This document shows, piece after piece, positions 1-58,086 of a DNA stretch of 64,000 nt. Position 1 is the first letter of the stretch, and every line of letters begins with the position of its first letter. The position numbers and the translations under genes were made by a program. The notes beneath the pieces were generated by a model. It worked only from the letters and a program-made list of their open reading frames with translations. It was not told where the DNA came from and searched no databases. The stretch comes from Rebecca billardiae RCC1528 (Eukaryota > Protista > Haptophyta): the NCBI GenBank assembly GCA_965240325.2, contig OZ251226.1:1488001-1552000 (forward strand), given 5' to 3'.

Positions 1-3000
1 GTCTCCGCTCATGCGCGACATCTTCGAGCGCGCGGACATCTTCGACCTCGCCGACAACGCAGAGCGATGGCTCCCGGCTGCGACGAGGCGAGTCGCGGAG
101 CATGGGTCGGGCGCACGCGTGAGCCATGCGCGCGTCGCGCGCACCCGCAGCGGCGCGGGGCTGACCTCTCGGGCACAGCCGTGGGCGTTGGCGCGCACCT
201 TCGTCGTACACGTGCGTGTACTGGCGCATCGCGCTGTCCATCATCAGCCCCTCCTCCTGCGGGTACGTCTTGATCAGCGCCTTGTACGCATCGCGCGTGA
301 GCGAGTACACGACCGTCTCCGCGCCGCTCGCCGTGCGGCCGTTCTTAAAGTGGCGGATGCTGAAGGTGAAGGACATGCTGCCCACCGTGCTGCCCGACGA
401 GCGCACCTCGAGACCCTCGCCATCCTCAGTGGTCATGCCGACCAGGTTGAGCTGCATCTCGTCCTCGTACATCTCGATGCTGCCCGACTTGATGACGAAG
501 AGCTCGTTGCAGACCTCGCCCATGCGGAAGACGGTCGTCTCCGGCTCGATGCGACGCTCCTTGAGCACCGAGGCGAAGCGATCCTTGAAGCCCTCCGAGC
601 ACTCGGCGAGCAGCGAGCAGCCGCTGATGATGTGCCGGATGGTGTGCTTGGACACCTCGAGCTGGAGCGACATGGGGAGCATGTCGTACACCTGCTCCGA
701 CTGCACGGACGAGAGCGACGCGTCCTTCAGCCGGGCGTGGAAGAACGCCTCGATCTTCGCCTTGAGGTCGCCAGGCACGCGGATGTGCGCGACGTACGAC
801 TGCACGATCTCGAGCTGCGCGCGCTTGGCCACGATCTCGTCGTCCTGCTTCATCACGAGCGCCGAGATCTGGCCGACAGTCCACGCGTACACGGTCATGT
901 TCACGATCATCGCGACCACGAAGAAGAGCAGCTCGGTGTACGTCGCCGGGAGCTGCGTCAGCCCGAGCGACGTCAGCATGGACATGACGAAAAAGAGGCA
1001 CATCAGGTACTGGTTTGCAAACGTCACGGACGAGAGGCGGTCATTGCCGATGTGGTCGTGCTGCGAGTCCACCACTTCCTCATAGTAGCGCAGCTGCGTC
1101 CACCACGTCACCTCGGCCCCTTCGGCCAAGGTCGAGAACGCGCACAGGTTCCAGATGCACGAACCGAGGTGCGCCGCATACAGGAGCACCCCCAGGTACA
1201 TCTGCAGCCCGCTGCGGAGGTCGTCATCGGGACAACGCTTCCTCCACTTGCTGATCGCAGAGCGCAGGTACCGCATGTTGATCATGCGCAGCACGCGCAG
1301 CGTGTACGGCACGAAGGCGGGCGCACCCACGGCGAGCGCGAGGAAGTTGTGCGGCCAGCACGCAAAGCAGTCGAGCGGGAAGTCCCTCGCCAAGTAGTGC
1401 CTGGCGATGCCTGCAGGATCGTAGACAGTGACCGAGTGCTGGTTGATGCTGGACACGCGGAAGCGCAGTGCGATGCGCACGATGTAGAAGATGTCTGCGC
1501 CGATGCCCATGTACAGCAGCGCCTCTGACTGCTCCGCCCTGGTGCCGAAGCAGACGGCGACCGGGATCACAATTGAATCCCACGCAGTCACGTACAGGAA
1601 GAGCGTCTCGAAGAGGCCGAACGCCTTCGAATCGTGACGCACGATGAAGCTTGGCACGGCGGCGGCTGCGGCAGCTGCCGTTGCATCACCGCCGCCGCTG
1701 TTGGCGAGCGCAAGGAGCCGCGTGGACCGAGCCATGCCGAATGCAGCGGCCACGCGCAGGCTCATGCGGCCTTTCGCGTCCAGCTGTCCGAGCAGCGGGG
1801 TGTCCTCCTCAGCGGCACTTACCCGCGCGAGGTCCCTGTCGGCGGCGTCATCCTTGTGCGCGAAGAGGGCAGCGACCAGATCTCGCCATGTCACGTCGGC
1901 CGGCGGCTTCTCAACGACGGTTGTCGTGATGTTCGCAAGCTTGATGCCGTTGGAGAAACCCACCAGGCCGCCATCGCTGCTGCTGTCATCGCTGTCGTTT
2001 CCGTTGCCATCGGCGATGTCGGCCACAGGCGGCGCATGCGGCGTGATGTCCAGGCCGAGGGTTGTCAAGACCCAGTCCTCGAGCAACTCCTTCTTGGTGT
2101 CGGGAGGGATGGCGATGGTCTGCTTCACGTGGTACAGCAGGGCGCCCGTCTGCACAGGGCCGACCGGATCGATGCGCTGCGCTTCGATGTGGTTCTGGAT
2201 GTGGTTTGCCAAAGTAAGCGCCGCCCTGGGCGCGCACATGGCGGTTGCCAGCGCCTCCTTGGCTTGCGCCTCTTGTGCCTGCAAGAAGGCCTCCGGGTCG
2301 TTTGCGAGATCCAGCGTGCCTTCAGCGAGCGTAAGATCACCAGCGGAGGGTATGGCCTGACTCACACAGTTCGCGAGCAGCCACGAAGCCACGCCGACGT
2401 AGAACTGCGCCTCGGTGAGGAACCGCGCCGGGGGTCGCTCCTTCTGCAGCGAGCGACTCAAGTCGTCCGACGAACGCGACTGCGAGTCGCTGCGAATGGT
2501 CACGTCAGAGCCGCTCGCGGAGTCGTCCTCGCTTGACACCTCGCTTGAGTCCGAAGACGAGTTGGAGTCAGAAGGACTTGCTGCGATGCCAGTAGGCAAG
2601 GGCGAATCGTAGGAAGGCACCGATGCCTCACCATAGCCAACGACATCCTCCGTAGAGGGTGGCGGACCCGCCGCCGCGATGTCAGCCAGCATCTCGTCGT
2701 GGTGGTCGGCGAAGCGGTCCACGCCCTGCATGTCCAGCGCGGTCGGCGGCATCGCGGCGGTCGTCTCGAGCGCCTGCTTCAGCAGCTCGTCCTCCGTCTT
2801 GCCCATCTCCTTGGGCAGACGCTCCTTGCGGTGCTTCGGACCCACCTGATCCGAGCGGTGCGACACCTCCACCTCCGACGGCAGCAGCTGCAGCAGCTGA
2901 CCCAGCTTTGCCAACCGCTCCTTCATGTCGCTGCCGCCGCCAACCTCGAACTGCACGCCAAAGCACAGGCGGTACACGCCGTTCGAGTCGTGCACCGGAC

Positions 3001-12000: not shown

Positions 12001-15000
12001 GCTGCATCCCCATGCCCATCATCTGCGCGGGCGCGGCCGCCATCGTCGGCGCCATCGGCGTCTCCTCAAACGGCAGGCTGCCGCCAGAGATCTCCGCCAT
12101 CATCTCGTCGTGGTGGTCGGCGAAGCGGTCCTCGCCCTGCATGTCGAGCGCGGTCGGCGGCATCGTCGCACTCGACTCGAGCGCCTGCTTCAGCAGCTCG
12201 TCCTCCGTCTTGCCCATCTCCTTGGGCAGACGCTCCTTGCGGTGCTTCGGGCCCACCTGATCCGAGCGGTGCGACACCTCCACCTCCGACGGCAGCAGCT
12301 GCAGCAGCTGACCCAGCTTCGCCAACCGCTCCTTCATGTCGCTCCCGCCGCCAACCTCGAACTGCACGCCAAAGCACAGGCGGTACACGCCGTTCGAGTC
12401 GTGCACCGGACGCATCGAAAGCAGGTTCTGAAACGTCTCGCCGTTCTTGCGGTAGTTGGTGATCTTCACAAAGCAGTCCGCGCCGCGACGGAGCGTGTCC
12501 TGGATGATCGCCACAGACGCCGGCTCCGTGCGCGGGCCCTGCAAGAAGCGGCAGTTCCGACCCTGCGCCTCGTGCTTCGCAAAGCCGGTCACGCGGCAGA
12601 AGTCGCGGTTCACGAACAACATCGGGTTGCCCGGCATCGCCATGTCCGAAAGCACGATGCACGCCGGGAACGTCTCCGCGAACGCGACGAACGAGTGGAT
12701 GAAGCCAGCCATGTCCTCCGGGACCTTGTACTTGTCCCAGATCAGGTCCTTGCGCTGCTTGATGCGCTGGCCCGCCACAGAGGCCTCCACGATCGACTCG
12801 CACGCCGGCGAGCGCACGAACCGAGCAAGCGCGTCGCTCGCAAGCTTCTTGCCGATCTCGGACACCTTCTCCTCCACGGCGCGCATGTCCATCGACTTGG
12901 CCTGCGCAGAGCTCAGACCGAGGTGCTTCTCCAGCACGGTGCGCTTACGCACGTCGCGTGACGCGCCCGCCGCCATGCCGCTCAGCTTGCGCGCCTCCGA
13001 CCAGAACTCGAGCTCGCGGTCCTCCTTCGTCTCCTTCAAGAACCCGCGGAAGGCTTCGTACGACTGCGGGTCCTCCGTCAGACGCTGCAGGCTCGTCTCA
13101 GAATCAAGCGTCCACTGCAGCTTCGTGAACAGCGACTGCGCCGAGCGGAACTGACGCTCCTTCGCGCCCTCGTCCACGTGCACCACGTCCGCCGTGAACG
13201 TCGACGGCTGCGCAGACGCCGGCATGCGCCGCGGAAGCAGCCCGCGCAGCGTCGACAGCGCCTGCTGCTCCTCCGCCGTCTGCTCCTCCGCGCACGACAG
13301 CACGCCCAGCGAGTACCGGTACTCGCCGTTCGTGTCCATCACCGGCGTGAGCGACAGGTCGTTCGTGAAGCGAGAGCCGTTCTTGCGGTAGTTCGTCACC
13401 TTCACAAGAAGCTCCTTCTTCTTGCGCAGCGCGCGGACCATCTTCGACACGATGTTCGGCTCCGTCCGGTCGCCCTGCAAGAAGCGGCAGTTCCGGCCCT
13501 CCACCTCGTACTTCGGGTAGCCGGTCACGCGAGCGAAGCCGCCGTTGCAGTACATCACCGTCACGCCCGGCACCGTCATGTCCGTGATCGCCACCGCGAT
13601 CTGCAGCGGCTCCACAGCCGCCTTGAGCGCGCCGAGCCACGTGCCGTCGCCCGCACGAGGTACCGAGCCGCGACCCTCGCCCGCCGCGCGCAGTGCCTCC
13701 AAGATCTCCAGCGTCGGCTGAGGAAGGCTGAACGCGCCGCCGCCGCCGCCGCCGCCCATGCCGCCGCCGCCCATGGCGCTCATCGGCTGCTGCGGCTGCA
13801 TCGGCTGCTGCTGCTGCTGCATCGGCTGCTGCTGCTGCATCGGCTGCTGCTGCATCATCGGCTGCTGCTGCATCATCGGCTGCTGCTGCTGCTGCATCGG
13901 CTGCTGCTGCATCATCGGCTGCTGCATCCCCATGCCCATCATCTGCGCGGGCGCGGCCGCCATCGTCGGCGCCATCGGCGTCTCCTCAAACGGCAGGCTG
14001 CCGCCAGAGATCTCCGCCATCATCTCGTCGTGGTGGTCGGCGAAGCGGTCCTCGCCCTGCATGTCGAGCGCGGTCGGCGGCATCGTCGCACTCGACTCGA
14101 GCGCCTGCTTCAGCAGCTCGTCCTCCGTCTTGCCCATCTCCTTGGGCAGACGCTCCTTGCGGTGCTTCGGACCCACCTGATCCGAGCGGTGCGACACCTC
14201 CACCTCCGACGGCAGCAGCTGCAGCAGCTGACCCAGCTTCGCCAACCGCTCCTTCATGTCGCTGCCGCCGCCAACCTCGAACTGCACGCCAAAGCACAGG
14301 CGGTACACGCCGTTCGAGTCGTGCACCGGACGCATCGACAGCAGGTTCTGGAACGTCTCGCCGTTCTTGCGGTAGTTGGTGATCTTCACAAAGCAGTCCG
14401 CGCCGCGACGGAGCGTGTCCTGGATGATCGCCACAGACGCCGGCTCCGTGCGCGGGCCCTGCAAGAAGCGGCAGTTCCGACCCTGCGCCTCGTGCTTCGC
14501 AAAGCCGGTCACGCGGCAGAAGTCGCGGTTCACGAACAACATCGGGTTGCCCGGCATCGCCATGTCCGAAAGCACGATGCACGCCGGGAACGTCTCCGCG
14601 AACGCGACGAATGAGTGGATGAAGCCAGCCATGTCCTCCGGGACCTTGTACTTGTCCCAGATCAGGTCCTTGCGCTGCTTGATGCGCTGGCCCGCCACAG
14701 AGGCCTCCACGATCGACTCGCACGCCGGCGAGCGCACGAACCGAGCAAGCGCGTCGCTCGCAAGCTTCTTGCCGATCTCGGACACCTTCTCCTCCACGGC
14801 GCGCATGTCCATCGACTTGGCCTGCGCAGAGCTCAGACCGAGGTGCTTCTCCAGCACGGTGCGCTTACGCACGTCGCGTGACGCGCCCGCCGCCATGCCG
14901 CTCAGCTTGCGCGCCTCCGACCAGAACTCGAGCTCGCGGTCCTCCTTCGTCTCCTTCAAGAACCCGCGGAAGGCGTCGTACGACTGCGGGTCCTCCGTCA

Positions 15001-27000: not shown

Positions 27001-30000
27001 TCACGCCCGGCACCGTCATGTCCGTGATCGCCACCGCGATCTGCAGCGGCTCCACAGCCGCCTTGAGCGCGCCGAGCCACGTGCCGTCGCCCACATTCGG
27101 CATGCTTCCTTGGCCCTCTCCTGCAGCGCGAAGTGCCTGGAGGATCTCTGTCGTCTGCATCGGGAGCATGCTCTCCGTGGGCATGTTCTGGCTGTAGCCG
27201 ATCCCGTTGGTGACGCTGTTCGCTGCAATCGATGGTGCGGTGGGCTGGGAGTACGCGTGCCCTTCGCCTTGCTGGCTCTGCTGCACCGCCAGAAAGGGCT
27301 GCTGAGCCGCATCGCTGTTCAGCTGGCCATTTTGCTGCGCGCCAGCATACCCATTGGCTGCAGCCCAGGGAAGAAAAGTCGACACGTGCTCCTCGTCTTC
27401 TGGCGCAGGTATTTCTGCTATGTAGTCACCGTCAGCTGCGATGTCCGCGAGCATCTCGTCGTGGTGGTCGGCGTACCTGTCCACGCCCTGCATGTCGCTC
27501 GCCGCCTCGGGTACAACTTCTCGAGCCTCGAGCGCGCGCTGCAGCAGCTCGTCCTCCGTCTTGCCAAAGTCGGCGTTGGATGTCCGTTTGCGGTGCTTTG
27601 GCCCGACCCGCTCTGATCTGTGCTGCACCTCGACCTCCGACGGCAGCAGCTGCAGCAGCTGACCCAGCTTCGCCAACCGCTCCTTCAAGTCGCTGCCGCC
27701 CGCCACCTCGAACTGCACGCCAAAGCACAAGCGGTACACGCCGTTCGAGTCGTGCAGCGGGCGCATCGACAGCAGGTTCTGGAACGTCTCGCCGTTCTTG
27801 CGGTAGTTGGTGATCTTCACGAAGCAGTCCGCGCCGCGACGGAGCGTGTCCTGGATGATCGCCACAGACGCCGGCTCCGTGCGCGGGCCCTGCAAGAAGC
27901 GGCAGTTCCGACCCTGCGCCTCGCGCTTCGCGAAGCCGGTCACGCGGCAGAACTCGCGGTTCACGAACAGCATCGGGTTGCCCGGCATCGCCATGTCCGA
28001 CAGCACGATGCACACCTTGAACGTCTCCGCGAACGCGACGAACGAGTGGATGAAGCCAGACAGGTCATCCGGCACCTTGTACTTGTCCCAGATCAGGTCC
28101 TTGCGCTGCTTGATCCGCTGGCTGCCCACGGCCGCATCGACGATCGGCTCGCACGCTGATGACTTGATGAACTCGGGCAGCACCTCGCGAGCCAGCTTCA
28201 TCTTGATCTCAGCGGCCCTCCTGTCCACGCTCGAGAAGTCGAGTGCCTTGGCCTGCGCCGTACTCAGCCCGAGGTACTTCTCGCAGATCGTGCGCTTGAG
28301 GATGTCGCGGCTTGCCCCAGACATGCCGCCGAGCTTGCGCGACTCCAGCCAGAATTCGAACTCGTTCGCCTCCGCCGTGCCGGACAGGTACGAACGCAAC
28401 GCTGCCAGTGCATTCGAGTCTACCACAAGCCAGTCCAAACAAGCTTGGGCTTCCAGCGTCCACTGCAGCTTCGTGAAGAGCACCTGAGCAGCACGGAACT
28501 GCTTGTCCTTCGCCATGTCGTTCACAACGACGTCGGGAGCGAAAGTCTGCGGCTGGGCGTCCGCGGGCATGCGCCGCGGCAGCAGCTCGCGCAGCGCCGA
28601 CAGCGCCTGCTGCTCCTCCGCCGTCTGCTCCTCCGCGCACGACAGCACGCCCAGCGAGTACCGGTACTCGCCGTTCGTGTCCATCACCGGCGTGAGCGAC
28701 AGGTCGTTCGTGAAGCGAGAGCCGTCCTTGCGGTAGTTGGTCACCTGCACGTGCAGCTCCTTCTTCTTGCGCAGCGCGCGGACCATCTGCGAGACGATGT
28801 TCGGCTCCGTCTGCTCGCCCTGCAAGAAGCGGCAGTTCCGGCCCTCGACCTCGTGCTTCGGGTAGCCCGTCACGCGCGTGAAGCCGTCGTTGCAGTACTG
28901 CACGATCACGCCCGGCACCGTCATGTCCGTGACGGCGACCGCGAACGGCAGGGCATCGACCGCCGCCTTGAGCGCGCCGAGCCACGTGCCGTCACCCGCT
29001 GTCGGCATGCCGCCACGGCCGTCGCCCGCGCCCAACAGAGCCTGCAAAAGGTCGATCGTGTCTTGGGGCAAGGCCGATGCCTCACCCTCGAAGTTGTCGA
29101 GTCCAGCGTCGCCTTCTTGCGCGATGTCTGCGAGCATCTCGTCGTGGTGGTCGGCGTACCTGTCCACGCCCTGCATGTCGCTCGCCGCCTCGGGTACGAC
29201 TTCTCGAGCCTCGAGCGCGCGCTGCAGCAGCTCGTCCTCCGTCTTGCCAAAGTCGGCGTTGGATGTCCGTTTGCGGTGCTTTGGCCCGACCCGCTCTGAT
29301 CTGTGCTGCACCTCGACCTCCGACGGCAGCAGCTGCAGCAGCTGACCCAGCTTCGCCAACCGCTCCTTCAAGTCGCTGCCGCCCGCCACCTCGAACTGCA
29401 CGCCAAAGCACAAGCGGTACACGCCGTTCGAGTCGTGCACCGGACGCATCGACAGCAGGTTCTGGAACGTCTCGCCGTTCTTGCGGTAGTTGGTGATCTT
29501 CACGAAGCAGTCCGCGCCGCGACGGAGCGTGTCCTGGATGATCGCCACAGACGCCGGCTCCGTGCGCGGGCCCTGCAAGAAGCGGCAGTTCCGACCCTGC
29601 GCCTCGCGCTTCGCGAAGCCGGTCACGCGGCAGAACTCGCGGTTCACGAACAGCATCGGATTGCCCGGCATCGCCATGTCCGACAGCACGATGCACACCT
29701 TGAACGTCTCCGCGAACGCGACGAACGAGTGGATGAAGCCAGACAGGTCATCCGGCACCTTGTACTTGTCCCAGATCAGGTCCTTGCGCTGCTTGATGCG
29801 CTGGCTGCCCACGGCCGCATCGACGATCGGCTCGCACGCTGATGACTTGATGAACTCGGGCAGCACCTCGCGAGCCAGCTTCATCTTGATCTCAGCGGCC
29901 CTCCTGTCCACGCTCGAGAAGTCGAGTGCCTTGGCCTGCGCCGTACTCAGCCCGAGGTACTTCTCGCAGATCGTGCGCTTGAGGATGTCGCGGCTCGCCC

Positions 30001-33000
30001 CAGACATGCCGCCGAGCTTGCGCGACTCCAGCCAGAATTCGAACTCGTTCGCCTCCGCCGTGCCGGACAGGTACGAACGCATGGCAGACAAAGCCTTTGC
30101 ATCCTGCACGAGCCGATCCAAGCTCGCTTCGGCGTCGAGCGTCCACTGCAGCTTCGTGAAGAGCACCTGAGCAGCACGGAACTGCTTGTCCTTCGCCATG
30201 TCGTTCACAACGACGTCGGGAGCGAAAGTCTGCGGCTGGGCGTCCGCGGGCATGCGCCGCGGCAGCAGCTCGCGCAGCGCCGACAGCGCCTGCTGCTCCT
30301 CCGCCGTCTGCTCCTCCGCGCACGACAGCACGCCCAACGAGTACCGGTACTGGCCGTTCGTGTCCATCACCGGCGTGAGCGACAGGTCGTTCGTGAAGCG
30401 AGAGCCGTCCTTGCGGTAGTTCGTCACCTGCACGTGCAGCTCCTTCTTCTTGCGCAGCGCGCGGACCATCTGCGAGACGATGTTCGGCTCCGTCTGCTCG
30501 CCCTGCAAGAAGCGGCAGTTCCGGCCCTCGACCTCGTGCTTCGGGTAGCCGGTCACGCGCGTGAAGCCGTCGTTGCAGTACTGCACGATCACGCCCGGCA
30601 CCGTCATGTCCGTGACGGCGACCGCGAACGGCAGGGCATCGACCGCCGCCTTGAGCGCGCCGAGCCACGTGCCGTCGCCCACGCTCGGCATCGCGCCCTT
30701 GCCATCACCTGCTGCGCGAAGCGCGAGTAAGATGTCCGCCGATGGCCGCGGAACGCCCGCCGAAGGGATGTCGGCGCCGACACGAGAGGCAACGACGCCC
30801 ATAGGGCTGGATGGAGCGAGGTGGGAAGGCGCAGTCTGTGGTGCAGCAATGGCCGGGGCACCAACAGCTCTGGAGGGCACGCCCGTGCCAGTCTGTGGCG
30901 TCTCGTCGAACGGCAGGCTGCCGCCCGTGATCTCCGCCATCATCTCGTCGTGGTGGTCGGCGAAGCGGTCGGCGCCCTGCATGTCCTGAGCTCCGCTGGG
31001 CATCACTGCGATCTCCTCCATGGCCACCTTGAGCATCTCGGCCTCGGACTTGCCCATCTCCTTGGGAAGTCGCTCCTTGCGGTGCTTCGGCCCGACCCGC
31101 TCCGATCTGTGCTGCACCTGCACCTCGGACGGCAGCAGCTGCAGCAGCTGACCCAGCTTCGCCAACCGCTCCTTCATGTCGCTCCCGCCCGCCACCTCGA
31201 ACTGCACGCCAAAGCACAGGCGGTACACGCCGTTCGAGTCGTGCACCGGACGCATCGACAGCAGGTTCTGGAACGTCTCGCCGTTCTTGCGGTAGTTGGT
31301 GATCTTCACAAAGCAGTCCGCGCCGCGACGGAGCGTGTCCTGGATGATCGCCACAGACGCCGGCTCCGTGCGCGGGCCCTGCAAGAAGCGGCAGTTCCGC
31401 CCCTGCGCCTCGTGCTTCGCAAAGCCCGTCACGCGGCAGAACTCGCGGTTCACGAACAGCATGGCGTTGCCAGGCATCGCCATGTCCGAAAGCACGATGC
31501 ACGCCGGGAACGTCTCCGCGAACGCGACGAACGAGTGGATGAAGCCAGCCAGGTCCTCCGGCACCTTGTACTTGTCCCAGATCAGCTCCTTGCGCTGCTT
31601 GATGCGCTGGCTGCCCACGGCCGCATCGACGATCGGCTCGCATGCGGGCGAGCGCACAAACCGCGGCAGCGCGTCGCCTGCAAGCTTCTTCCCGAGTTCG
31701 ACCACTTTGCGCGCGACACCGTCCATGTCCATCGCCTTCGCCTGCGCGCTCGTCATCTTGAGGTACTTCTCGCAGATCTTGCGCTTGTGCACGTCGCGCG
31801 AGCCGCCCTTCATGCTGGCCAGCTTGCGCGCCTCGATCCAGAACTCGAGCTCGTTCTCCTCACCGGTCGGCTTCAGGAACGAGCGGAGCGCGTTGAGTGC
31901 TGAAGAGTCATCCGCCAAGCGCGTAAGTGTCGCATCGGCGTCGAGCGTCCACTGCAGCTTGGTGAAGAGCAGCTGCGCGTCGCGGAACTGCCTGTCCTTC
32001 GCCTCGTCGTCGACAGCCTCCTCCTTCGCGAAGGCGGTCGGCTGTGCAGCTGCGGGCATGCGCCGCGGCAGCAGCTCGCGCAGCGCCGACAGCGCCTGCT
32101 GCTCCCCGGTGGACTGCGTCTCCGCGCACGACAGCACGCCCAACGAGTACCGGTACTCGCCGTTCGTGTCCATCACCGGCGTGAGCGACAGGTCGTTCGT
32201 GAAGCGAGAGCCGTCCTTGCGGTAGTTCGTCACCTGCACGTGCAGCTCCTTCTTCTTGCGCAGCGCGCGGACCATCTGCGAGACGATGTTCGGCTCCGTC
32301 CGGTCGCCCTGCAGGAAGCGGCAGTTCCGGCCCTCGACCTCGTGCTTCGGGTACCCCGTCACGCGCGTGAAGCCGGCGTTGCAGTACATCACCGTCACAC
32401 CCGGCACCGTCATGTCCGTGATCGCCACCGCGATCGGCAAGGTGTCGACCGCCGCCTTGAGCGCGCCGAGCCACGTGCCATCTCCGGCAGTCGAGACATC
32501 GCTGGCCCCGTCGGCCGTAGCCTGGAGGGCTCGGAGGAGCTCCACCGAGGCGGACGGCAGCTGGAAGTCCGTTGGATCAGCATGGCTGCCGCCGGACGCA
32601 GCCGGTACTGGAGCGAGCTCGACGCCGTTGATCTCCGCGAGCATCTCGTCGTGGTGGTCGGCGTAGCGGTCGGCGCCCTGCATGTCCTGAGCTCCGCTGG
32701 GCATCACCGCGATCTCCTCCATGGCCACCTTGAGCATCTCGGCCTCGGACTTGCCCGTCTCCGCGGGCAGCCGCTGCTTGCGGTGCTTCGGCCCGACCCG
32801 CTCCGACCTGTGCTGCACCTCGACCTCCGACGGCAGCAGCTCCAGCAGCTGACCCAGCTTCGCCAACCGCTCCTTCAGGTCGCTCCCGCCCGCCACCTCG
32901 AACTGCACGCCAAAGCACAGGCGGTACACGCCGTTCGAGTCGTGCACCGGACGCATCGACAGCAGGTTCTGGAACGTCTCGCCGTTCTTGCGGTAGTTGG

Positions 33001-36000
33001 TGATCTTCACGAAGCAGTCCGCGCCGCGACGGAGCGTGTCCTGGATGATCGCCACAGACGCCGGCTCCGTGCGCGGGCCCTGCAAGAAGCGGCAGTTCCG
33101 ACCCTGCGCCTCGTGCTTCGCAAAGCCGGTCACGCGGCAGAAGTCGCGGTTCACGAACAGCATCGGGTTGCCGGGCAGCGCCATGTCCGACAGCACGATG
33201 CACGCTGGGAACGTCTCCGCGAACGCGACGAACGAGTGGATGAAGCCAGCCATGTCCTCCGGGACCTTGTACTTGTCCCAGATCAGGTCCTTGCGCTGCT
33301 TGATCCGCTGGCTGCCCACGGCCGCCTCGACGATCGGCTCGCATGCGGGCGAGCGCACAAACCGCGGCAACGCGTCGCTCGCGAGCTTCTTGCCAAGCTC
33401 AGCCACCCTCTGGTCGACGCCGTCCATGTCCATCGCCTTCGCCTGCGCGCTCGTCATCTTGAGGTACTTCTCGCAGATCTTGCGCTTGTGCACGTCGCGC
33501 GAGCCGCCCTTCATGCTGGCCAGCTTGCGCGCCTCGATCCAGAACTCGAGCTCGTCGTCCTCGCCGGTCTCCTTGAGGAACGAGCTGAACGCATCGCGAG
33601 CGTGCTGATCGGTCGTCAGCCGCTCCAGGCTCGACTCCGAGTCGAGCGTCCACTGCAGCTTGGTGAAGAGCAGCTGCGCCGAGCGAAACTGCCTGTCCTT
33701 CGCCTCGTCGTCGACAGCCTCCTCCTTCGCGAAGGCGGTCGGCTGTGCAGCTGCGGGCATGCGCCGCGGCAGCAGCTCGCGCAGCGCCGACAGCGCCTGC
33801 TGCTCCTCCGCCGTCTGCTCCTCCGCGCACGACAGCACGCCCAGCGAGTACCGGTACTGGCCGTTCGTGTCCATCACCGGTGTGAGCGACAGGTCGTTCG
33901 TGAAGCGAGAGCCGTTCTTGCGGTAGTTCGTCACCTGCACGTGCAGCTCCTTCTTCTTGCGCAGCGCGCGGACCATCTGCGAGACGATGTTCGGCTCCGT
34001 CTGCTCGCCCTGCAGGAAGCGGCAGTTCCGGCCCTCGACCTCGTGCTTCGGGTAGCCGGACACGCGCGTGAAGCCGTCGTTGCAGTGCATCACCGTCACA
34101 CCCGGCACCGTCATGTCCGTGATCGCCACCGCGATCTGCAGTGGCTCGACCGCCGCCTTGAGCGCGCTGAGCCACGTGCCGTCACCCACGACGGGCATGC
34201 CGCCCTGTCCATCCCCGGCTGCGCGGAGGGCGCGGAGGATGTCCACGGTCGGCCTTGGCAACGAAGCGGACCCGATTTCGTCGGGGCCTGCGCTCGGCCC
34301 GCTCGTTGCGCCATCGTCATCATCGATGGCCTGCGCTGCCATATTCGCCGCCGCCATGACCTTCGTCGCGTCCTTAAGATGCGTGCGCAGCGACTCGAGC
34401 TCCTCGCTGCCCACCTCCGTCTGCAGCTGCCTCACGTCGCGCAGGCGGATCGTGTTCTTCTTCTTCGGCGCGAAGACGCGATGCAGGGTTGTCAGGACGT
34501 ACGCTGTGCTCGCCAACGCCTCGAAAGCGCTGGCGCTCTCGCCCTCTTCCGCGGCCGCCTCGCCCGTGCTGCGCACGTTGCGGCCGGCCAGAATGCCGAT
34601 GAAGCGCTTCGAGCAGAAGAGCACGACGCAGCCGAGGTCGGAGATGAAGAAGGGCGCCGTCGACTCGGACGATGGCTGGATGTTCGTCATGCCGGCGAGC
34701 GCGTTGAGCGAGGCGGCGAGCACGCTTGGGCGACGCGCAGAAACGCTCGGGCGGCGGGGCGCTGCAGGTGATGCGCTGCCAGCGTCAGCCATGGGCTGGC
34801 TGCCGCGGCGCGCCGTGCCGCTCACGTGCTGCGTGACGGCGAAAAGCGAGCTGCCGACAATCGAGTTGGTGCGCAACGCGCGTCGCAGAGCGTGATCCTC
34901 GGGTGGCACCGGAGCGTCATGCGGTGATGTGCTCGGCCGGTGCGGCGCACTGTCGCCAGCAAACGCCCTGAGCCCGGTGTAGATCTCGTCCATCACCGCA
35001 TTGGCCTCGGCGTAGGTCAGCTGGCACTCATTCATCAGGATGTCTTCGAGTGCGAGATTCTCTTGCCGCAGGCGCTCGTTGATTGGCAGCGAGTCGCGCG
35101 CCTCCGCCGAGAGCTTCTTCATGAAGAGGTCACGCAGCTTGGCGAGGCCCTCCTCCGCGCGCGGCAGTCGGAGGATGGAGCGCACGAAGAGCTTCGCCGC
35201 CTCCCCGGATGCGGCCACCGCTTCTTCTTCCTCGGCGTTGTCGTCAATCGAGCCCGGCGGTGTTTCGCCATCGAAGTCCGACTCCTGGGACGACATGTCG
35301 TCGAGATCGGACTGGCTGCAGCTGTCGCCGTCGGAGTCCTGCGTCTCCTTCGAGTAGTTGGCAATCCAGTCGTCCGTCGCCTTGTCGAGATAGCGTGCGA
35401 GAATGCGTGCGGCTCGGGTAAACATGTGCACATGCTTGCTGAGCGCCTTGAGGCTGACGGTGATCGGCTGCCGCAGCGCCTGCTTGGTCTCGCGCAGCGT
35501 CATCCGTCGCTCGCCGTGCTCCTTGAGCTTGCGGTCGATGCGGTACAGATTGACCGACTTCGCCTCCTCGTAAGCTTCGCGTAGCTCGTCATCGTCTGCG
35601 TAGCCCTCGGGCAGGTGCGCTCCGCACATCTGTACGATGAGCGCGGCCGTGTCGAGGTTGGTCTCGAGCGCGGGCACGAGCGGCGACGCGCCCCAGCGGT
35701 CGAGCGCCATCACGTCCGCGCGCGCGGCGACAAGCACAGCCGCCCCCGAGATGGCGCCCGCAGATGCGACGCGGTGGAAGGCGGTGCGTCCGTCGTAATC
35801 ACTGGCGTCCACCCCCACGCCCATGTCGACGAGGAAGCGCAGAATGTCGACATCCGATGCGACCGCTGCGTCGCGCAGGGCCTTCTCCATGCGCACCGGG
35901 TCCGCGCGCGAGTTGGCCTCGGCGAGCATGCGCGCGACGTGGAGGTGCTGGTTCTGGATGGCGTCGTCGATCGGCTTGCGCCCGCGCTTGTCCTCCGCGT

Positions 36001-36625
36001 TCACGTCCGCGAGGTGCGACATCAGGTGCTCGACGACGCGCACGTTGCCGTCCGCCGCGGCGATGTGCAGCGCGGTGCGGTCGTCGTAGTTCTTTGCCTG
36101 CACGTCGATGCCGTACGCGAGGATCATCGACATGTACGTGAGGTCGCCGTCACTCGCCGCCTTGTGCATCCACGCGGCGGGGTGCTCGACGTCGATCTCC
36201 GCGCCGAAGCTGCTCAGCACGCTCGCCACGTTGTCATGCCGCATATCAATCGCGTCGCGCATCGGCGTGCAGCCCCAGCGGTCCTTGGCGTTGACGTCGG
36301 CGCCGAGCTCGCACAGCAGCTGCACCACCTTGAAGCTGCCGTCGGCGGCGGCGAGGTGCATCGTCGTGCGCGCGTCGTAGCCCGACATGTTCAGGTCGAA
36401 GCCGCGGCCGGCGAGCGTGCGCACAGTCTCGACGTCGCCCTGCATCGCCGCCGCCGACATCTGCGCGAAGGCCGCCTGGTTGCGCTCGATGATGGTCTGG
36501 CGGATCTTCTCCTTGAGCTCCTCCGCCTCCTCGTCCGCGTTCTTGGCATCGTCGTCGTCAGCATCACCGCCAGCACCGCCGGCGGCACCGGTGCCAGCTG
36601 CGCCGGCAGCGCCACCGCTTGCAGT

Positions 36626-36691
<66 letters not shown>

Positions 36692-38617
36692 GCCGGCAGT
36701 GTAGCCGATCTGCGTGATGTCGTTGCCGTGCTTGTCGAGCCCAAACTTGCGCAGCAGGCTCGACGTGATCATGTCGGCCTGGTCGGGGTACGACTGGATG
36801 ATGTTCTCGTACTCGGAGACGGTGAGGGCGAGCAGCGTGACGTAGCCGGCGGAGGAGGCCATCACCGTGTACGGCTGGTGGATGCCGAGGAAGAAGGCGA
36901 GCTCGCCCACCACTTGGCCCGGCCCGAGGTCGGCGAGGATGGTCGCCACGTTCTCGTCGCCCTTGCGCACGTAGAGGGTGCCGCCCACGCACCACAGCAG
37001 CTCGGTCGCGCCCTCGCCCTGGAAGAAGAGAGGCTCTCCGGGCATGACAAAGCGCTCGCGCACGGCGAGGACGATCTGGCCGAGGAACTGCGGCGAGCAG
37101 CCGTGCAGCACCCACGTGGCCTGCATCTCGCGCAGGTACTGCGCCGACGCGACCTGCGTGCGCAGCGAGGGCGGCATCTGCTGGAACACCTTGCCCGAGC
37201 TGGACGAGCTCTTGTGGTGCTGTGCGGCGCCGACAGATGCGCGCGCCGGGGGCCGGGGCGCGAAGCGGAGCGTGTGAGCCCGCGCGGCGCGCGCGGGGGG
37301 AGCGCATGCTGGCCGCGCAGCACGGGGCGCGCGGCGTACCTGGAACTCGAAGTGCGCGCGCACGCGCCCCGCGACCGCCGTCGGCAGCTTGTTGGCGCGC
37401 GTGTACCCGTCGACGGCCTTCATCAGCTCCTTGAAATGGACCGTCGACTCGTCCACGCGCACGAGGTAGTGGAAGAGAGTACCGAGCACGAAGGCGTAGA
37501 AGACGATCTGCAGGATCATGATGACGATGGCGAAAGACGCCTCGGGCTCGCGCGCCGTGAGCTGCACCGAGCCGTAGCCCATCGACGTGATGCCCGCCCA
37601 GCCCATGTACGACGAGAGCAGGTACGCCTGCCAGCCCGTAGCGTGCATCGGGTCGAAGTCGTCGTTGTGTGTCCACTGCGCGGGCCACGAGGGCAGCTTG
37701 AGCGCCTCGGTCTGGTCCACCGCGCGCTCGGAGAGGAGCCACCACACGCAGCTCACCCAGTGCGGCACCGAGACGAGCACGAGCACAAACTTGAACGAGG
37801 CGAAGAAGGTGACGTTGGTCGTGAGGTCCGTCGACATGCGGTGCATGTGCGCGAGCAGGTCGTTGACGCGCGCACAGCGCACGACCTGGCCAAGCGTCCA
37901 CACCCACTGGAAGCCGAGGAAGATGAAGAGTGCGCGCCCCACGTGCAGAGTGGCGATGATCGCGACGTCGACCAACATGCGACGGCACGTCGGTGGCTGC
38001 TGCCCAACGCGCTCGAAGCGCTTCTTGTACCGCACGCGCGCACACATGTATGCGAACTCGTACAGGTCGATCACGATGTCGACGAGGATGCCGCCGGGGG
38101 AGGCGAGCAGCATCGACGGGAACGCCACGCGCACGGGGATAAGCAGCTCCTCCAGCGCGAGAAACCACAGGCGCGCCGCCGCGAAAGCGCGCAGGAATCC
38201 CATCCTCTCTGCGGCCGCGACTGTTCGGTTGGCGTCATCGGATGCTGGGTCGACCGCGATCGGCTTGTCGTCGTGGCCGACGAGGACCGTTCGCCACGTG
38301 ACGTGCCGCTCCCCGGGCGCTTGCGTGGGCTCGGGGCTTGCGTCCACCGCCTGCCCACGCGTCGGCATCTTCGCCGGAGAGTCCGGAAGCCGCAGAATGC
38401 CCTTGGTGGTAGGCTGCGTGCTGCTGGCATCCTCCTGCGCGCTCTGCAGGCCGAGAGCGGAGCGTGCGCGGTTCGCTGCGCTGCGCGATTTGTCCTTGGC
38501 CTGCTCAAAGCTGCGCGTGCCCAGCAGCGAGGATGGCCTGTCCTCGCCGCCCTTTACGAGGGGCGACGTCTCGCGCCCGGTGCTCGGCGGGCCGCGGCGA
38601 GTGTCGGGAGAGCTCAT
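1..38617 (-). CDS. Giant channel-photoreceptor fusion, 3' partial: 6TM K+ channel-CNBD-ankyrin-(LOV-RGS-LOV)x17-6TM channel-CNBD; predicted join(38617..37340, 37219..199, 77..<1), >=12,792 aa in window
   Basis: Minus frame whose codons start at plus positions 2 mod 3. The ORF track lists no minus ORF in this frame below the in-frame stop at 38795-38797, as expected if it is open to the edge. First ATG is at 38617 (gccacgATG). All repeat periods are multiples of 3. Manual translation gives recognisable domains along its length. Confidence 0.9.
78..198 (-). other. Predicted intron, 121 nt, phase 1
   Basis: GAAG|GTGCGC donor at 198 and TCGCAG acceptor at 78. The spliced product continues YDE-A-GSHRSALSARSKMSARSKMSRMSGD. 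Confidence 0.65.
230..829 (-). other. Domain: C-linker and CNBD-like domain 2
   Basis: VYDMLPMSLQLEVSKH...LLAECSEGFKDRFASVLKERRIEPETTVFRMGEVCNELFVIKSGSIE...YSLTRDAYKALIKTYP. Confidence 0.85.
830..1640 (-). other. Domain: second 6TM ion-transport module with non-canonical pore
   Basis: S1 FETLFLYVTAWDSIVIPVAVCF; S2-S3 IARHYLARDFPLDCFACWP; S4 LRVLRMINMRYLR; S5 YAAHLGSCIWNL; pore QYLMCLFFVMSMLTSLGLTQLP; S6 ELLFFVVAMIVNMTVYAWTVGQISALV. Confidence 0.85.
2689..34260 (-). repeat. Coding tandem array of 17 LOV(B)-RGS-LOV(A) units, 1683-1920 bp period
   Basis: GRNCRFLQG of LOV-A at low coordinates 3125, 5036, 6881, 8765, 10634, 12536, 14456, 16376, 18296, 20216, 22136, 24056, 25976, 27887, 29570, 31376, 33077. 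LOV-B at 4061, 5972, 7817, 9701, 11570, 13472, 15392, 17312, 19232, 21152, 23072, 24992, 26912, 28817, 30500, 32306, 34007. Between them SLQRLTEDPQSYDAFRGFLKETKEDRELEFWSEARKL...LASDALARFVRSPAC matches the RGS-box pattern. Confidence 0.95.
35640..36480 (-). other. Domain: ankyrin repeats (~9, in three triplets)
   Basis: GYDARTTMHLAAADGSFKVVQLLCELGADVNAKDRWGCTPM; NYDDRTALHIAAADGNVRVVEHLMSHLADVNAEDKRGRKP; DYDGRTAFHRVASAG...DRWGASP. Resembles the ankyrin tail of plant AKT1/SKOR-type channels. Confidence 0.9.
36626..36694 (-). repeat. (GGC)n coding repeat, Gly14-Ser-Gly8 linker
   Basis: gcc run on the plus strand between CNBD1 and the ankyrin repeats. Confidence 0.9.
36770..37449 (-). other. Domain: C-linker and cyclic-nucleotide-binding(-homology) domain 1 (span includes intron 37220-37339)
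   Basis: HFEFQ/HHKSSSSSGKVFQQMPPSLRTQVA...LHGCSPQFLGQIVLAVRERFVMPGEPLFFQGE...LGPGQVVGELAFFLGIHQPYTV. Confidence 0.85.
37220..37339 (-). other. Predicted spliceosomal intron, 120 nt, phase 0, stop-free
   Basis: CAG|GTACGC donor and GCACAG acceptor. Removal restores C-linker HFEFQHHK; retention inserts 40 Arg/Ala/Pro-rich residues. Confidence 0.75.
37450..38200 (-). other. Domain: N-terminal 6TM ion-transport module with K+ selectivity filter
   Basis: S5 FKFVLVLVSVPHWVSCVWWLL; pore AYLLSSYMGWAGITSMGYGSV (ITSMGYG at 37571-37591); S6 FAIVIMILQIVFYAFVLGTLFHYL. CNBD-channel (KCNH / plant Shaker-like) layout. Confidence 0.88.
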
Positions 38618-38990
38618 CGTGGCGAGGAGAGAAGGCGAGCTGACAAGCGCCGGGCAGGGCGGCTGGCCCAGATCACCCGCAGGAGATCGCCTCGGCTCTC
38701 CTCCTTTTCCAGACGGGACCGCGGCCGATCGTGATTCGTGAATTCTCGCGCCGACTAGAGACCTCCTCGCCCGCGGAAGCAAGCTTTCGACGGCCTAGGT
38801 AGGCGGTTCGGGCAAGTTCGTCAATGTCGCCGAGACTAGCGGGCGTATGTTTCGGAGCCCGGGCGAAGCCGCGGCGGCCCGGCGAGTTCTGCAGGCGAAA
38901 AAAGCAGCTGTTACGATACCGTTTGACAAGACAGACTCACGAACAGCTATTTCAAGGGCGTTCCCGGGATCCTGCCACACGCTCCCGAAA

Positions 38991-40052: not shown

Positions 40053-40364
40053 TGTCAAAGGAATCGCCAATCTACAGTGATTTCCAATTTCCAATCCAAC
40101 ATTTTACTCGCAGTCACACAGTGGCGGCGCGACCGCTGCGGCGGCGCTCGCACAAAATCCTCCAAAATCAACCTGAACCTCATCCTAAAATACAGCAGGA
40201 CAGCATGGCTGGCGGCGGCATCTCGAAGTATTCCAGATGATTCTGAATGAACGCGGAAACATGAGCCGAGCACCACGAACACGTTGTGCTCCGCACCGCA
40301 AGGCAAGAGCCGAAGCCGTCGACCGACCTCGCGACCGTCAAGCCTCGAGACGCGTTCCCTGACA
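40053..40364 (+). repeat. 5' LTR
   Basis: Direct repeat of 43193-43504 with TG...CA ends. Confidence 0.95.
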
Positions 40365-57891: not shown

Positions 57892-58086
57892 CGCCCCGAT
57901 CGACGGCCGAGATGGCGCTCTACAGTCTACACTGACCACCGCAGCACTTGTTCACCAAGCCCGGCATCGTTGTCCGGGGAGGGGCCTCCCCTGTCCGGCG
58001 GTCGGTCGTTGGTCTGGTCTGGGTCTCAAGTGTGGGCGCGGGAGCGCGGCACCGCCGCGACGGGGCCGCGCTCTCTGGTGGAAAGG

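What the first reader, a model, noticed from the sequence alone, without database searches (positions are those of the whole stretch)
1..38617. Candidate natural blue-light-regulated ion channel: CNBD/ankyrin K+ channel fused to 34 LOV and 17 RGS domains
Seen: one open minus-strand frame joins a GYG 6TM channel, CNBD and ankyrins to 17 LOV-RGS-LOV units and a second channel-CNBD module. Every LOV keeps the photoactive Cys in GRNCRFLQG. Known: LOV domains bind flavin and form a Cys adduct in blue light. RGS+LOV proteins exist (stramenopile helmchrome, fungal RGS-LOV such as BcLOV4), and LOV-gated K+ channels have been engineered (BLINK). I know of no natural LOV-channel fusion or protein with this many LOV domains, but I could not search. 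Inference: the array lies between the C-tail of channel 1 and the N-terminus of channel 2, so it is cytoplasmic. It could couple light to membrane potential (phototaxis or photoshock) without rhodopsin, with copy number raising photon capture. The ORF track misses the gene entirely.
Basis: partly seen in the sequence, partly recalled or inferred. Interest (0 to 1): 0.97.

Follow-up and report, generated by a model that had tools for sequence, protein, structure and literature searches.

The report
Giant LOV-array tandem ion channel gene
A GC-rich alga carries a real gene of more than 12,800 codons in which 34 blue-light-sensing LOV domains and 17 RGS domains sit inside the cytoplasmic linker of a two-repeat ion channel, making it a strong candidate for a natural flavin-based light-controlled channel, which has not been described.

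Summary
The minus strand from 38794 to 2 is one stop-free frame of 12,931 codons, while the other frames carry 34-406 stops. The first Met is at 38617.

The frame encodes, in order:
- a 6TM GYG pore, a CNBD and ankyrin repeats;
- 17 LOV-RGS-LOV units (34 NCRFLQ motifs, all with the Cys);
- a second 6TM pore and CNBD.

New here: LOV-less homologues, including an MMETSP transcript and Rhodelphis, have repeat I and repeat II in one protein. They align to residues 164-1522 and 12118-12859. The array is therefore an insertion into the inter-repeat linker of a two-repeat tandem CNBD channel.

A transcript-like contig from another organism (P0153/L003, 55-61% identical) runs from LOV units into repeat II, the CNBD, ankyrin repeats and a stop.

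- A 120-nt in-frame GT..AG intron lies at 37220-37339.
- The gene continues beyond the window start.
- Pore II is not GYG.
- Odd LOVs lack the active-site Gln.
- The RGS domains are divergent.
- Units 5-17 are 98-99.9% identical, so copy number rests on the assembly.

Light gating is inferred. No RNA run of this genome was listed. First-stage notes of this scan, unchecked, report similar loci elsewhere in this genome.

The parts
38615..38617 (-). Probable start codon (residue 60 of the open frame)
   Evidence: First Met after the stop at 38795-38797. GC3 periodicity starts here.
37451..38194 (-). Channel repeat I, S1-S6 (residues 201-448), with pore TSMGYG at 37571-37588
   Evidence: Hydrophobic segments. 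phmmer to SKOR, GORK, AKT1 and KAT1, E 4e-27 to 1e-11. GYG is conserved in five of six aligned repeat I sequences.
37220..37339 (-). 120-nt in-frame, stop-free intron (CAG|GTACGC...CACAG|CAC)
   Evidence: The 40 residues are absent from homologue P0001 exactly between ...FEFQ and H(H/R)K. GC3 periodicity drops here.
36788..37054 (-). CNBD of repeat I (residues 581-669). The phosphate-binding Arg reads Tyr (QPYTV).
   Evidence: Pfam cNMP_binding 37.6 bits. The motif was read from the sequence.
35525..36466 (-). Ankyrin repeats after CNBD I (residues 777-1090)
   Evidence: Pfam Ank_2, Ank_4 and Ank, E 1e-31. Aligned with P0001.
34229..35524 (-). Conserved post-ankyrin linker (residues 1091-1522), shared with LOV-less tandem channels
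   Evidence: BLASTP to P0162 up to its residue 1395. No stops in this frame against 9 and 8 in the other two. GC3 0.75-0.92.
27113..34207 (-). LOV-A / RGS / LOV-B units 1-4 (diverged, 77-94% DNA identity)
   Evidence: dN/dS 0.04-0.6.
2786..27112 (-). Units 5-17 (98-99.9% DNA identity; ~1.9 kb each). Each is LOV-A (Gln to Leu), RGS, LOV-B (canonical), then a Q/M/P-rich and poly-Gly spacer.
   Evidence: AF2 model of unit 8: pLDDT 91.5, pTM 0.80.
1658..2785 (-). Linker from the last LOV to repeat II. From residue 12124 (nt 2425) it is homologous to LOV-less tandem channels.
   Evidence: No stops in this frame against 9 and 11 in the other two.
854..1615 (-). Channel repeat II (Pfam Ion_trans, residues 12394-12647), with pore TSLGLT at 956-973
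   Evidence: Pfam E 6e-10. phmmer to hERG, EAG1, HCN1 and GORK, E 2e-24. Pore alignment.
263..556 (-). CNBD of repeat II (residues 12747-12844)
   Evidence: Pfam cNMP_binding 29.2 bits. 49% identical to P0124 across repeat II.
2..196 (-). Probable start of an intron (donor AAG|GTGCGC). The remaining exons (ankyrin tail, by homology) lie beyond the window start.
   Evidence: Periodicity is lost and the translation turns Arg/Pro-rich. Homologues P0124 and P0153 continue into a linker and ankyrin repeats.

Best explanation
This is a real giant gene of a GC-rich alga, probably a haptophyte.

Shown:
- The product is a two-repeat tandem channel of the CNBD family: 6TM-CNBD-ankyrin, then 6TM-CNBD, with an ankyrin tail expected beyond the window.
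- Its cytoplasmic inter-repeat linker has been invaded by 17 helmchrome-like LOV-RGS-LOV units. The in-window product is about 12,770 residues and 1.4 MDa.
- All 34 LOVs keep the adduct Cys. The flavin-pocket motifs NCRFLQ and NYRK are also kept. Every second LOV lacks the active-site Gln.
- The array is under purifying selection and is being homogenised.
- A diverged relative is transcribed across the LOV-to-channel junction.

Inferred:
- Two such chains pair to form one pseudo-tetrameric pore with two GYG and two non-GYG filters. This would make a cation channel of uncertain selectivity.
- Blue light forms flavin-Cys adducts in the loop and releases the helices flanking each LOV. This changes the compaction, membrane contact or RGS exposure of the loop that ties repeat I's CNBD-ankyrin module to repeat II's N-terminus. 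Gating shifts as a result.
- The outcome is a rhodopsin-independent route from blue light to membrane potential or Ca2+ signalling, for example in flagellar photoresponses.
For: Open frame and controls.

Domains.

LOV motifs and alignment to solved LOVs.

LOV fold: the unit model (pLDDT 91.5, pTM 0.80) matches solved LOV structures with TM up to 0.94 by target.

RGS: family profile E 1e-13 and fold, with all top 50 Foldseek hits being RGS or GRK RH domains.

Coding periodicity runs through both junctions. dN/dS is below 1.

LOV-less homologues P0162, P0163 (MMETSP transcript), P0173 and P0193 (Rhodelphis) hold both repeats in one protein. P0165 (N-terminally partial) holds the rest of that layout. 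Their homology stops at our residue 1522 and resumes near residue 12124 (12118-12126).

P0153/L003 carries 4 LOV + RGS + Ion_trans + CNBD + Ank + stop + 3' UTR on one transcript-like contig. The contig comes from the same JGI id series as an MMETSP transcript.

The repeat I/II filter asymmetry recurs across homologues.

Published support: Gln-to-Leu LOVs still signal (PMC9098866). RGS-LOV proteins switch membrane binding in light (PMC6099885). Two-repeat tandem CNBD channels exist in other protists (PMC7576140).
Against: - No RNA or protein evidence from this genome. No RNA run was listed, and run X1 gives only short low-depth contigs.
- The repeat I-to-array junction has no cross-species transcript support. 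The search with the linker found nothing.
- No experiment links LOV state to any CNBD-channel gate.
- The RGS domains seem to lack the alpha5-alpha6 segment that carries the catalytic Asn in RGS4-type GAPs.
- The 13 near-identical units make copy number dependent on assembly quality.
- The C-terminus is outside the window.
Confidence: 0.55

Rival explanations
1. The fused protein is real, but the array does not gate the pore. It acts as a channel-anchored, light-switched signalling scaffold. This could be helmchrome- or BcLOV4-like, with light-dependent membrane docking through the basic stretch after each LOV-B J-alpha helix, or exposure of RGS domains to G-alpha. The channel would then serve mainly to place the array at a membrane site such as a flagellar base.
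For: The unit is the helmchrome-like LOV/RGS module found free-standing in many marine protists. One example is P0154, 4197 aa, on a genomic contig with no channel. BcLOV4 works by light-switched lipid binding through a polybasic helix after J-alpha (PMC6099885). A K/R/H-rich stretch follows LOV-B in each unit.
Against: The insertion sits exactly in the linker joining the two pore-forming repeats. That is an odd place for a passive passenger of about 10,600 residues. The RGS domains lack the segment with the catalytic Asn, so GAP activity is doubtful.
Confidence: 0.2
2. One open frame but several products. Internal promoters, alternative splicing that skips the array, or proteolysis could yield a LOV-less tandem channel and a separate helmchrome-like array protein.
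For: The frame contains at least one in-frame intron, so frame continuity alone does not prove one mRNA. LOV-less tandem channels and free arrays both exist as separate genes in relatives. No RNA data exist for this genome.
Against: The relative's transcript-like contig L003 runs from the array into repeat II without a break. Coding periodicity and the absence of stops continue through both junction linkers. The linkers are homologous to those of single-chain tandem channels.
Confidence: 0.12
3. Assembly artefact or decaying gene. The array length, or the join between the array and a channel, was produced by mis-assembly of 1.9-kb repeats.
For: Units 5-17 are 98-99.9% identical. The only DNA run found covers the N-terminal region at very low depth.
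Against: The units carry private SNPs and spacer-length differences (615-640 residues), and identity decays toward the array edges. There is no stop in 12,931 codons. The junctions lie in unique sequence. A diverged relative has the same join. First-stage notes, unchecked, report similar loci elsewhere in this genome.
Confidence: 0.06
4. The LOV domains are not light sensors here. They could be redox or structural PAS modules, as in KCNH eag domains, and the array a spacer or tether.
For: KCNH channels carry a non-photoactive PAS/LOV-like domain (PMC8017926). Half of the LOVs lack the active-site Gln.
Against: All 34 keep GRNCRFLQG and NYRK plus the Asn of the F-x-N motif. The Cys is kept in 51/52 and 52/52 homologous units. 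KCNH PAS domains lack this motif. Gln-to-Leu LOVs still photocycle and signal.
Confidence: 0.05

Closest known systems
Helmchrome (stramenopile flagellar RGS/LOV protein) and the 'helmchrome-like' LOV+RGS sequences of Pavlovophyceae and Prymnesiophyceae (Coesel et al. 2021, PMC8017926)
   Same: The same building block: photoactive-type LOV domains combined with RGS. The best named hit of the unit is a Pavlovales sp. CCMP2436 LOV+RGS protein (58-69% identity).
   Different: Helmchrome has a few LOV and RGS domains and no membrane part (four LOV and two RGS by my recollection of Fu et al.; Coesel et al. describe two and two). Here 17 units (34 LOV, 17 RGS) lie inside an ion channel polypeptide. 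No channel fusion is mentioned in that paper.
[quoted passage not shown]
   Same: Two 6TM-CNBD repeats in one chain, with low identity between the repeats (~20% here) and each repeat specialised.
   Different: The published ones have no LOV or ankyrin (0 mentions) and tandem channels were not reported from haptophytes. Here ankyrin follows the CNBD of repeat I (and of repeat II in homologues), and the inter-repeat linker holds the array.
Plant Shaker channels SKOR, GORK and AKT1 (6TM - C-linker - CNBHD - ankyrin)
   Same: They are the best solved relatives of repeat I (E 4e-27). They share the 6TM-CNBD-ankyrin order and a GYG pore.
   Different: They are single-repeat subunits with no photosensor. 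Repeat I reads TSMGYG where I recall TxGYG with Val or Ile.
KCNH (EAG/hERG) channels with an N-terminal PAS 'eag' domain
   Same: They are the best solved relatives of repeat II (E 2e-24). A PAS-fold domain lies N-terminal to the 6TM-CNBHD core and regulates gating through the CNBHD (established knowledge). This is a precedent for PAS-to-gate coupling.
   Different: The KCNH PAS domain binds no flavin and lacks NCRFLQ. Here the PAS domains are LOV-type, there are 34 of them, and about 490 residues separate the last one from S1.
BcLOV4 and fungal RGS-LOV-DUF proteins (PMC6099885)
   Same: RGS next to a photoactive LOV. A basic stretch follows the J-alpha helix, which suggests light-switched membrane contact.
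   Different: BcLOV4 is a single RGS-LOV-DUF protein and is soluble. The unit here is LOV-RGS-LOV without the DUF.
BLINK1 (engineered LOV2-Kcv light-gated K+ channel)
   Same: It works like what is proposed here: LOV photochemistry coupled to a K+-channel-family pore.
   Different: BLINK1 is synthetic, with one LOV2 on a minimal viral pore. This gene is natural, and any coupling in it is untested.

Membership tests
LOV photosensor domain | PAS fold | tested here: met
   Pfam PAS_9, E 3e-78 for a four-LOV piece. In the AF2 unit model both LOVs have pLDDT above 90. Foldseek TM is up to 0.94 by target to phototropin and LOV-HK LOV domains.
LOV photosensor domain | GXNCRFLQ motif with the adduct-forming Cys | tested here: met
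   34 of 34 domains read GRNCRFLQG. The Cys is kept in 51/52 and 52/52 homologous units.
LOV photosensor domain | Active-site Gln on the I-beta strand | tested here: inconclusive
   Kept in the 17 even (B) LOVs and replaced by Leu in the 17 odd (A) LOVs. Leu variants still signal in other LOVs (PMC9098866).
LOV photosensor domain | Flavin binding and a blue-light photocycle | not testable with these tools
   Needs purified protein.
RGS domain | Sequence homology to RGS and the all-helical RGS fold | tested here: met
   Pfam RGS scores 58.5 bits for units 1-2 but 23.6 (cut-off 23.9) for unit 8. The family profile hits RGS16, RGS8, RGS5 and RGS4 at E 1e-13 to 1e-10. The AF2 model has pLDDT 95, and all top 50 Foldseek hits are RGS or GRK RH domains with TM 0.53-0.71.
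RGS domain | G-alpha contact residues of GAP-active RGS (alpha5-alpha6 Asn of RGS4) | tested here: inconclusive
   In the profile-to-RGS16 alignment this segment is gapped in the family. The D-x-x-x-R-F motif of alpha7-alpha8 is present. GAP activity is untested.
CNBD-family 6TM channel (HCN, CNG, KCNH, plant Shaker) | 6TM Ion_trans core with a pore loop | tested here: met
   Repeat II: Pfam Ion_trans E 6e-10. Repeat I: Pfam is weak (E 0.0055), but phmmer to SKOR and AKT1 gives E 4e-27 to 2e-16. Six hydrophobic or charged segments are found in each repeat.
CNBD-family 6TM channel (HCN, CNG, KCNH, plant Shaker) | C-linker plus a cyclic-nucleotide-binding (homology) domain | tested here: met
   cNMP_binding scores 37.6 and 29.2 bits against a cut-off of 27.5.
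CNBD-family 6TM channel (HCN, CNG, KCNH, plant Shaker) | Phosphate-binding-cassette Glu and Arg needed for cNMP binding | tested here: inconclusive
   By inspection, CNBD I reads GELAF...QPYTV (Arg to Tyr). CNBD II reads GSMSF...GRTAS (Glu to Ser), and its Arg is not kept in P0124. Ligand binding is doubtful, as in CNBHD channels.
K+-selective channel | TxGYG filter in all four pore-forming units | tested here: not met
   Repeat I has TSMGYG. Repeat II has TSLGLT and is never GYG in the nine aligned homologues; six read T-x-L-G-[LMVI]. Selectivity cannot be called.
Two-repeat tandem CNBD channel | Two 6TM-CNBD repeats in one polypeptide, each orthologous to the same repeat in relatives | tested here: met
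   P0162, P0163, P0173, P0193 and (N-terminally partial) P0165 align to residues 164-1522 and 12118-12859 in that order. Pfam of P0162 and P0163 supports this: P0163 two cNMP_binding stretches, a direct repeat I pore hit (Ion_trans_2) only in P0162. P0163 is an MMETSP transcript.
Helmchrome (sensu Fu et al.) | Stramenopile orthologue located in the flagellar swelling | not testable with these tools
   Only the domain content is shared. Localisation is unknown, and the organism looks haptophyte-like. Filed as helmchrome-like, not as a member.

The most novel reading that the evidence does not exclude
This would be the first natural flavin-based light-gated ion channel. A dimer would carry 68 LOV domains in two giant cytoplasmic loops. 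Blue-light-driven unfolding or membrane docking of those loops would pull on the CNBD-ankyrin gating ring of a pseudo-tetrameric pore. A haptophyte-type alga would gain a rhodopsin-independent photoelectric response whose sensitivity or threshold is set by the evolvable unit number.
Probability: 0.4. Interest if true: 0.97.

Novelty: new variant of a known kind. Interest (0 to 1): 0.88.

Why it matters
As far as I know, every natural light-gated ion channel described so far is rhodopsin-based. LOV-controlled channels exist only as engineered constructs such as BLINK1.

A natural LOV-channel fusion, seen also in a diverged relative, would matter in four ways:
- It would add an ion channel to the effector repertoire of LOV photoreceptors.
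- It would offer a candidate blue-light photoelectric mechanism for haptophytes. Coesel et al. state that the role of their helmchrome-like genes in phototaxis remains unknown.
- It would provide a natural template for single-component optogenetic channels.
- It would be a clear case of a sensory array inserted into, and amplified within, the linker of a tandem channel, with concerted evolution of 1.9-kb units.

It also shows that such genes escape annotation. No protein marked as the window's own appeared in two word-index searches and one exhaustive search.

Tried and rejected
- RNA evidence from this genome: the look-up of sequencing runs was busy twice and then listed no RNA run. With kind 'any' it gave one run, X1, at 0.05 of the words. 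Laying it on 33400-38800 gave eight short contig pieces, four of them 99% or more alike, and nothing bridging a junction.
- The first homologue search, on repeat I plus ankyrin, was swamped by ankyrin proteins.
- A search restricted to the post-ankyrin linker found nothing. The repeat I-to-array junction therefore has no cross-species support.
- The metagenome scan with a repeat II alignment gave one weak 37-residue match (L002), which I did not use.
- P0124's contig could not be fetched.
- Foldseek of the whole unit against the PDB returned only LOV hits. The RGS was therefore modelled and searched alone.
- Glantz et al. 2016 (the LOV census) is not held, and the Coesel supplements are not held. 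Their domain-combination tables could not be checked for Ion_trans+LOV.
- Considered and rejected: that repeat II is the start of a separate downstream gene read through by chance. The 376-codon linker has no stop, against 9 and 11 in the other two frames. It also keeps GC3 periodicity and is homologous to the inter-repeat linker of single-chain tandem channels.
Full report

Yes. The minus-strand frame from 38794 to 2 has 12,931 codons without a stop. Over the same span the other five frames have 34-406 stops. The ORF listing does not show the frame because it runs off the window start.

The first Met is at 38615-38617. Third-position GC rises to 0.8-1.0 only from there on. The next gene upstream (47437-57951, minus strand) is VPS13-like and unrelated, so the 5' limit of the gene is clear.

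- There are exactly 34 NCRFLQ motifs, all in a GRNCRFLQG context.
- There are 17 RGS copies.
- Pfam finds cNMP_binding (residues 581-669) and ankyrin repeats (777-1090) in the N-terminal part.
- Pfam finds PAS_9 and RGS in the units.
- Pfam finds Ion_trans (12394-12647, E 6e-10) and cNMP_binding (12747-12844) at the C-terminal end.

Repeat I has TSMGYG at residues 403-408. It falls below Pfam's Ion_trans cut-off (E 0.0055). It nevertheless matches the solved plant Shaker channels SKOR, GORK, AKT1 and KAT1 at E 4e-27 to 1e-11. Repeat II matches hERG, EAG1, HCN1 and GORK at E 2e-24 to 3e-19.

Hydropathy gives the expected S1-S6 pattern in both repeats. No hydrophobic segment lies between them.

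**2.

(a) The frame is not a single exon. Residues 486-525 (nt 37220-37339) begin CAG|GTACGC and end CACAG|CAC. They are Arg/Pro/Ala-rich with weak periodicity. They are missing from homologue P0001 exactly between FEFQ and H(H/R)K. This is a 120-nt intron that happens to be in frame and stop-free.

(b) After ...VYDEG (nt 197) a GT donor follows and periodicity is lost. Homologues P0124 and P0153 continue into a linker and ankyrin repeats. The gene therefore continues beyond the window start.

(c) The pore of repeat II is TSLGLT. In the nine aligned homologues it is never GYG; six read T-x-L-G-[LMVI]. Five of the six aligned repeat I sequences, ours included, keep GYG. A K+-selective pore cannot be assumed.

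(d) The LOVs alternate. Odd (A) domains have Leu where the active-site Gln sits (SLGVLS against GIQS in 9vf7). Even (B) domains keep it (FGVQFE). Across 52 homologous units the A position is Leu in 25 and Gln in 18, and the B position is Gln in 45. The Cys is kept in 51/52 and 52/52. Published work shows that Gln-to-Leu LOVs still signal, and that about 350 natural Gln-less LOVs exist (PMC9098866).

(e) The RGS is divergent. Units 1-2 score 58.5 bits, but unit 8 scores 23.6 against a cut-off of 23.9, and only 9 of 52 family members pass E 1e-3. A family profile hits RGS16, RGS8, RGS5 and RGS4 at E 1e-13 to 1e-10. The AF2 model (pLDDT 95) returns only RGS or GRK RH domains among the top 50 Foldseek hits, with TM 0.53-0.71. 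The segment that carries the catalytic Asn of RGS4-type GAPs is gapped in the family.

**3. Anatomy of the array**

A unit runs as follows:
- an N-cap helix,
- LOV-A and a J-alpha-like helix,
- the RGS,
- LOV-B and its J-alpha helix,
- a K/R/H-rich stretch,
- a Q/M/P-rich spacer and a poly-Gly spacer.

The AF2 model of unit 8 is confident as a whole (pLDDT 91.5, pTM 0.80). This suggests a compact three-domain module. The best AlphaFold DB cluster match is R1D5N9 (45% identity, TM 0.68 by query).

Units 1-4 are 77-94% identical to each other and to the rest at the DNA level. Units 5-17 are 98-99.9% identical, with the highest identity in the middle of the array. They carry private SNPs and spacer-length differences of 615-640 residues. 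That is the pattern of unequal crossing-over and not of a collapsed or duplicated assembly. Even so, the copy number rests on the assembly.

Between the diverged units, dN/dS is 0.04-0.6 in LOV-A, LOV-B and the RGS. dS is much lower in the LOVs (0.03-0.17) than in the RGS (0.16-0.83). This points to gene conversion or codon constraint focused on the LOV segments.

**4. What it is: an insertion into a tandem channel**

The exhaustive HMMER search with LOV 34 + linker + repeat II found two kinds of relatives.

First, proteins of 2,100-2,700 residues without any LOV: P0162, P0163, P0165, P0173 and P0193. They align to our residues 164-1522 (repeat I, CNBD, ankyrin, linker), then directly to 12118-12859 (linker, repeat II, CNBD), and then carry ankyrin. 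P0165 is N-terminally partial and begins within repeat I. P0163 is an MMETSP transcript, and P0193 is from the Rhodelphis marinus EukProt set. In P0162 the homology stops at its residue 1395 (our 1522) and resumes at 1460 (our 12124).

The scaffold is therefore a single-chain, two-repeat CNBD channel. That kind has been described from dinoflagellates and oomycetes, without LOV or ankyrin (PMC7576140). The roughly 10,600-residue array is an insertion into its inter-repeat linker.

Second, P0153 (2,567 residues, 55-61% identical to ours). It has four LOVs and RGS, then the linker, Ion_trans, cNMP_binding, ankyrin and a stop.
- Its contig L003 (8,490 nt) holds this one long ORF plus a 3' UTR.
- Its 5' end lies inside the array, with an N gap between repeated LOV-A sequence.
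- It comes from JGI sample 3300016954 (Ga0186516). P0163's MMETSP transcript comes from the same id series (3300016802, Ga0186151).
- It is thus very probably a transcriptome contig.
- The same sample also holds the LOV-less paralogue P0162, on a contig with short UTRs on both sides.

This is independent evidence, most likely at the RNA level, that LOV units and repeat II form one product in another organism.

**5. Single protein in this genome?**

No RNA data could be obtained. The indirect evidence is as follows:
- There are no stops in either junction linker, against 8-11 in each other frame.
- GC3 stays at 0.72-0.92 through both linkers, dipping to 0.65-0.73 only in a Ser/Asp-rich low-complexity stretch (residues ~12031-12090).
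- Both linkers are homologous to single-chain tandem channels.
- The relative's contig runs from the array into repeat II.

The repeat I-to-array junction lacks cross-species support.

**6. Mechanism**

Shown: the domain order, a cytoplasmic loop, photoactive-type LOV motifs, the RGS fold, and a recurrent asymmetric pair of pores.

Inferred: two chains form one pore, as in other two-repeat channels. Adduct formation releases the flanking helices. The state of the loop that ties repeat I's CNBD-ankyrin module to repeat II's N-terminus then alters gating.

Two precedents make this plausible. In KCNH channels, which are the best solved relatives of repeat II, an N-terminal PAS domain regulates gating through the CNBHD (established knowledge). 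BcLOV4 docks to anionic lipids in light through a basic helix after J-alpha (PMC6099885), and a basic stretch follows each LOV-B here.

Both CNBDs look like CNBHDs. In CNBD I the cassette Arg is Tyr. In CNBD II the Glu is Ser, and its Arg is not conserved in P0124. These were read. Cyclic-nucleotide gating is therefore doubtful.

**7. Novelty**

Coesel et al. 2021 reported helmchrome-like LOV+RGS transcripts in Pavlovophyceae and Prymnesiophyceae. They call them undescribed and of unknown role, and do not mention a channel. A 2026 LOV survey lists RGS-LOV-LOV but no channel.

Searches for LOV + RGS + channel in algae or haptophytes returned only optogenetics reviews and these papers. The tandem-channel survey does not mention LOV. 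The Glantz 2016 census and the Coesel supplements could not be read, so an unremarked table entry cannot be excluded.

First-stage notes of this scan, unchecked, report similar loci in the same genome. One lies 1.3 kb beyond this window's end.

**8. Verdict**

This is a real, very unusual gene. The architecture is well supported, and light control of the channel is a strong but untested inference.

Noticed in passing
window 47437-57951 (-): A 3,505-codon open frame with VPS13_N (E 4e-54) and VPS13 adaptor-binding domains. It crosses a stretch of 75-80% GC at 54-58 kb. It is a separate upstream gene.
   Followed up: partly
window 3767-27616 (+): A series of 330-570-codon GTG-started ORFs on the plus strand, one per unit. 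They are antisense shadows of the GC-rich repeated coding sequence and not genes.
   Followed up: partly
window 2786-34207 (-): Between diverged units, synonymous divergence is several-fold lower in the LOV segments (dS 0.03-0.17) than in the RGS segment (dS 0.16-0.83). This suggests gene conversion or codon constraint focused on the LOVs.
   Followed up: partly
window 36566-36694 (-) and the unit spacers (e.g. 19433-19760): A 43-residue Gly/Ala run lies between CNBD I and the ankyrin repeats and is absent from homologue P0001. Each homogenised unit ends in a Q/M/P-rich repeat plus poly-Gly, the (GCTGCTGCTGCATCATCG)n arrays of TRF. These are possible disordered or condensate-forming spacers.
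   Followed up: no
window 40265-42928 (+) and 43573-46179 (-): An 888-codon open frame lies in a lower-GC (55-60%), A-skewed stretch and has no Pfam hit. An 869-codon Arg/Ala/Ser/Pro-rich frame is probably non-coding. This ~8.6-kb stretch between the LOV-channel gene and the VPS13-like gene remains unexplained.
   Followed up: partly
L004 (P0162), L005 (P0163), P0173, P0193: There is a family of LOV-less two-repeat CNBD-ankyrin channels. It is present in MMETSP transcriptomes and in Rhodelphis marinus. The first pore is GYG in all four but Rhodelphis P0193, and the second is non-GYG in all four. The published survey of tandem CNBD channels did not report them outside dinoflagellates and oomycetes.
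   Followed up: partly
P0154 (JGI 3300045300, 18.6-kb contig): A free-standing 4,197-residue LOV/RGS array with six NCRFLQ motifs and at least five LOV-RGS-LOV units. It lies on a metagenomic contig flanked by ordinary genes. Multi-LOV arrays therefore also exist without a channel.
   Followed up: partly
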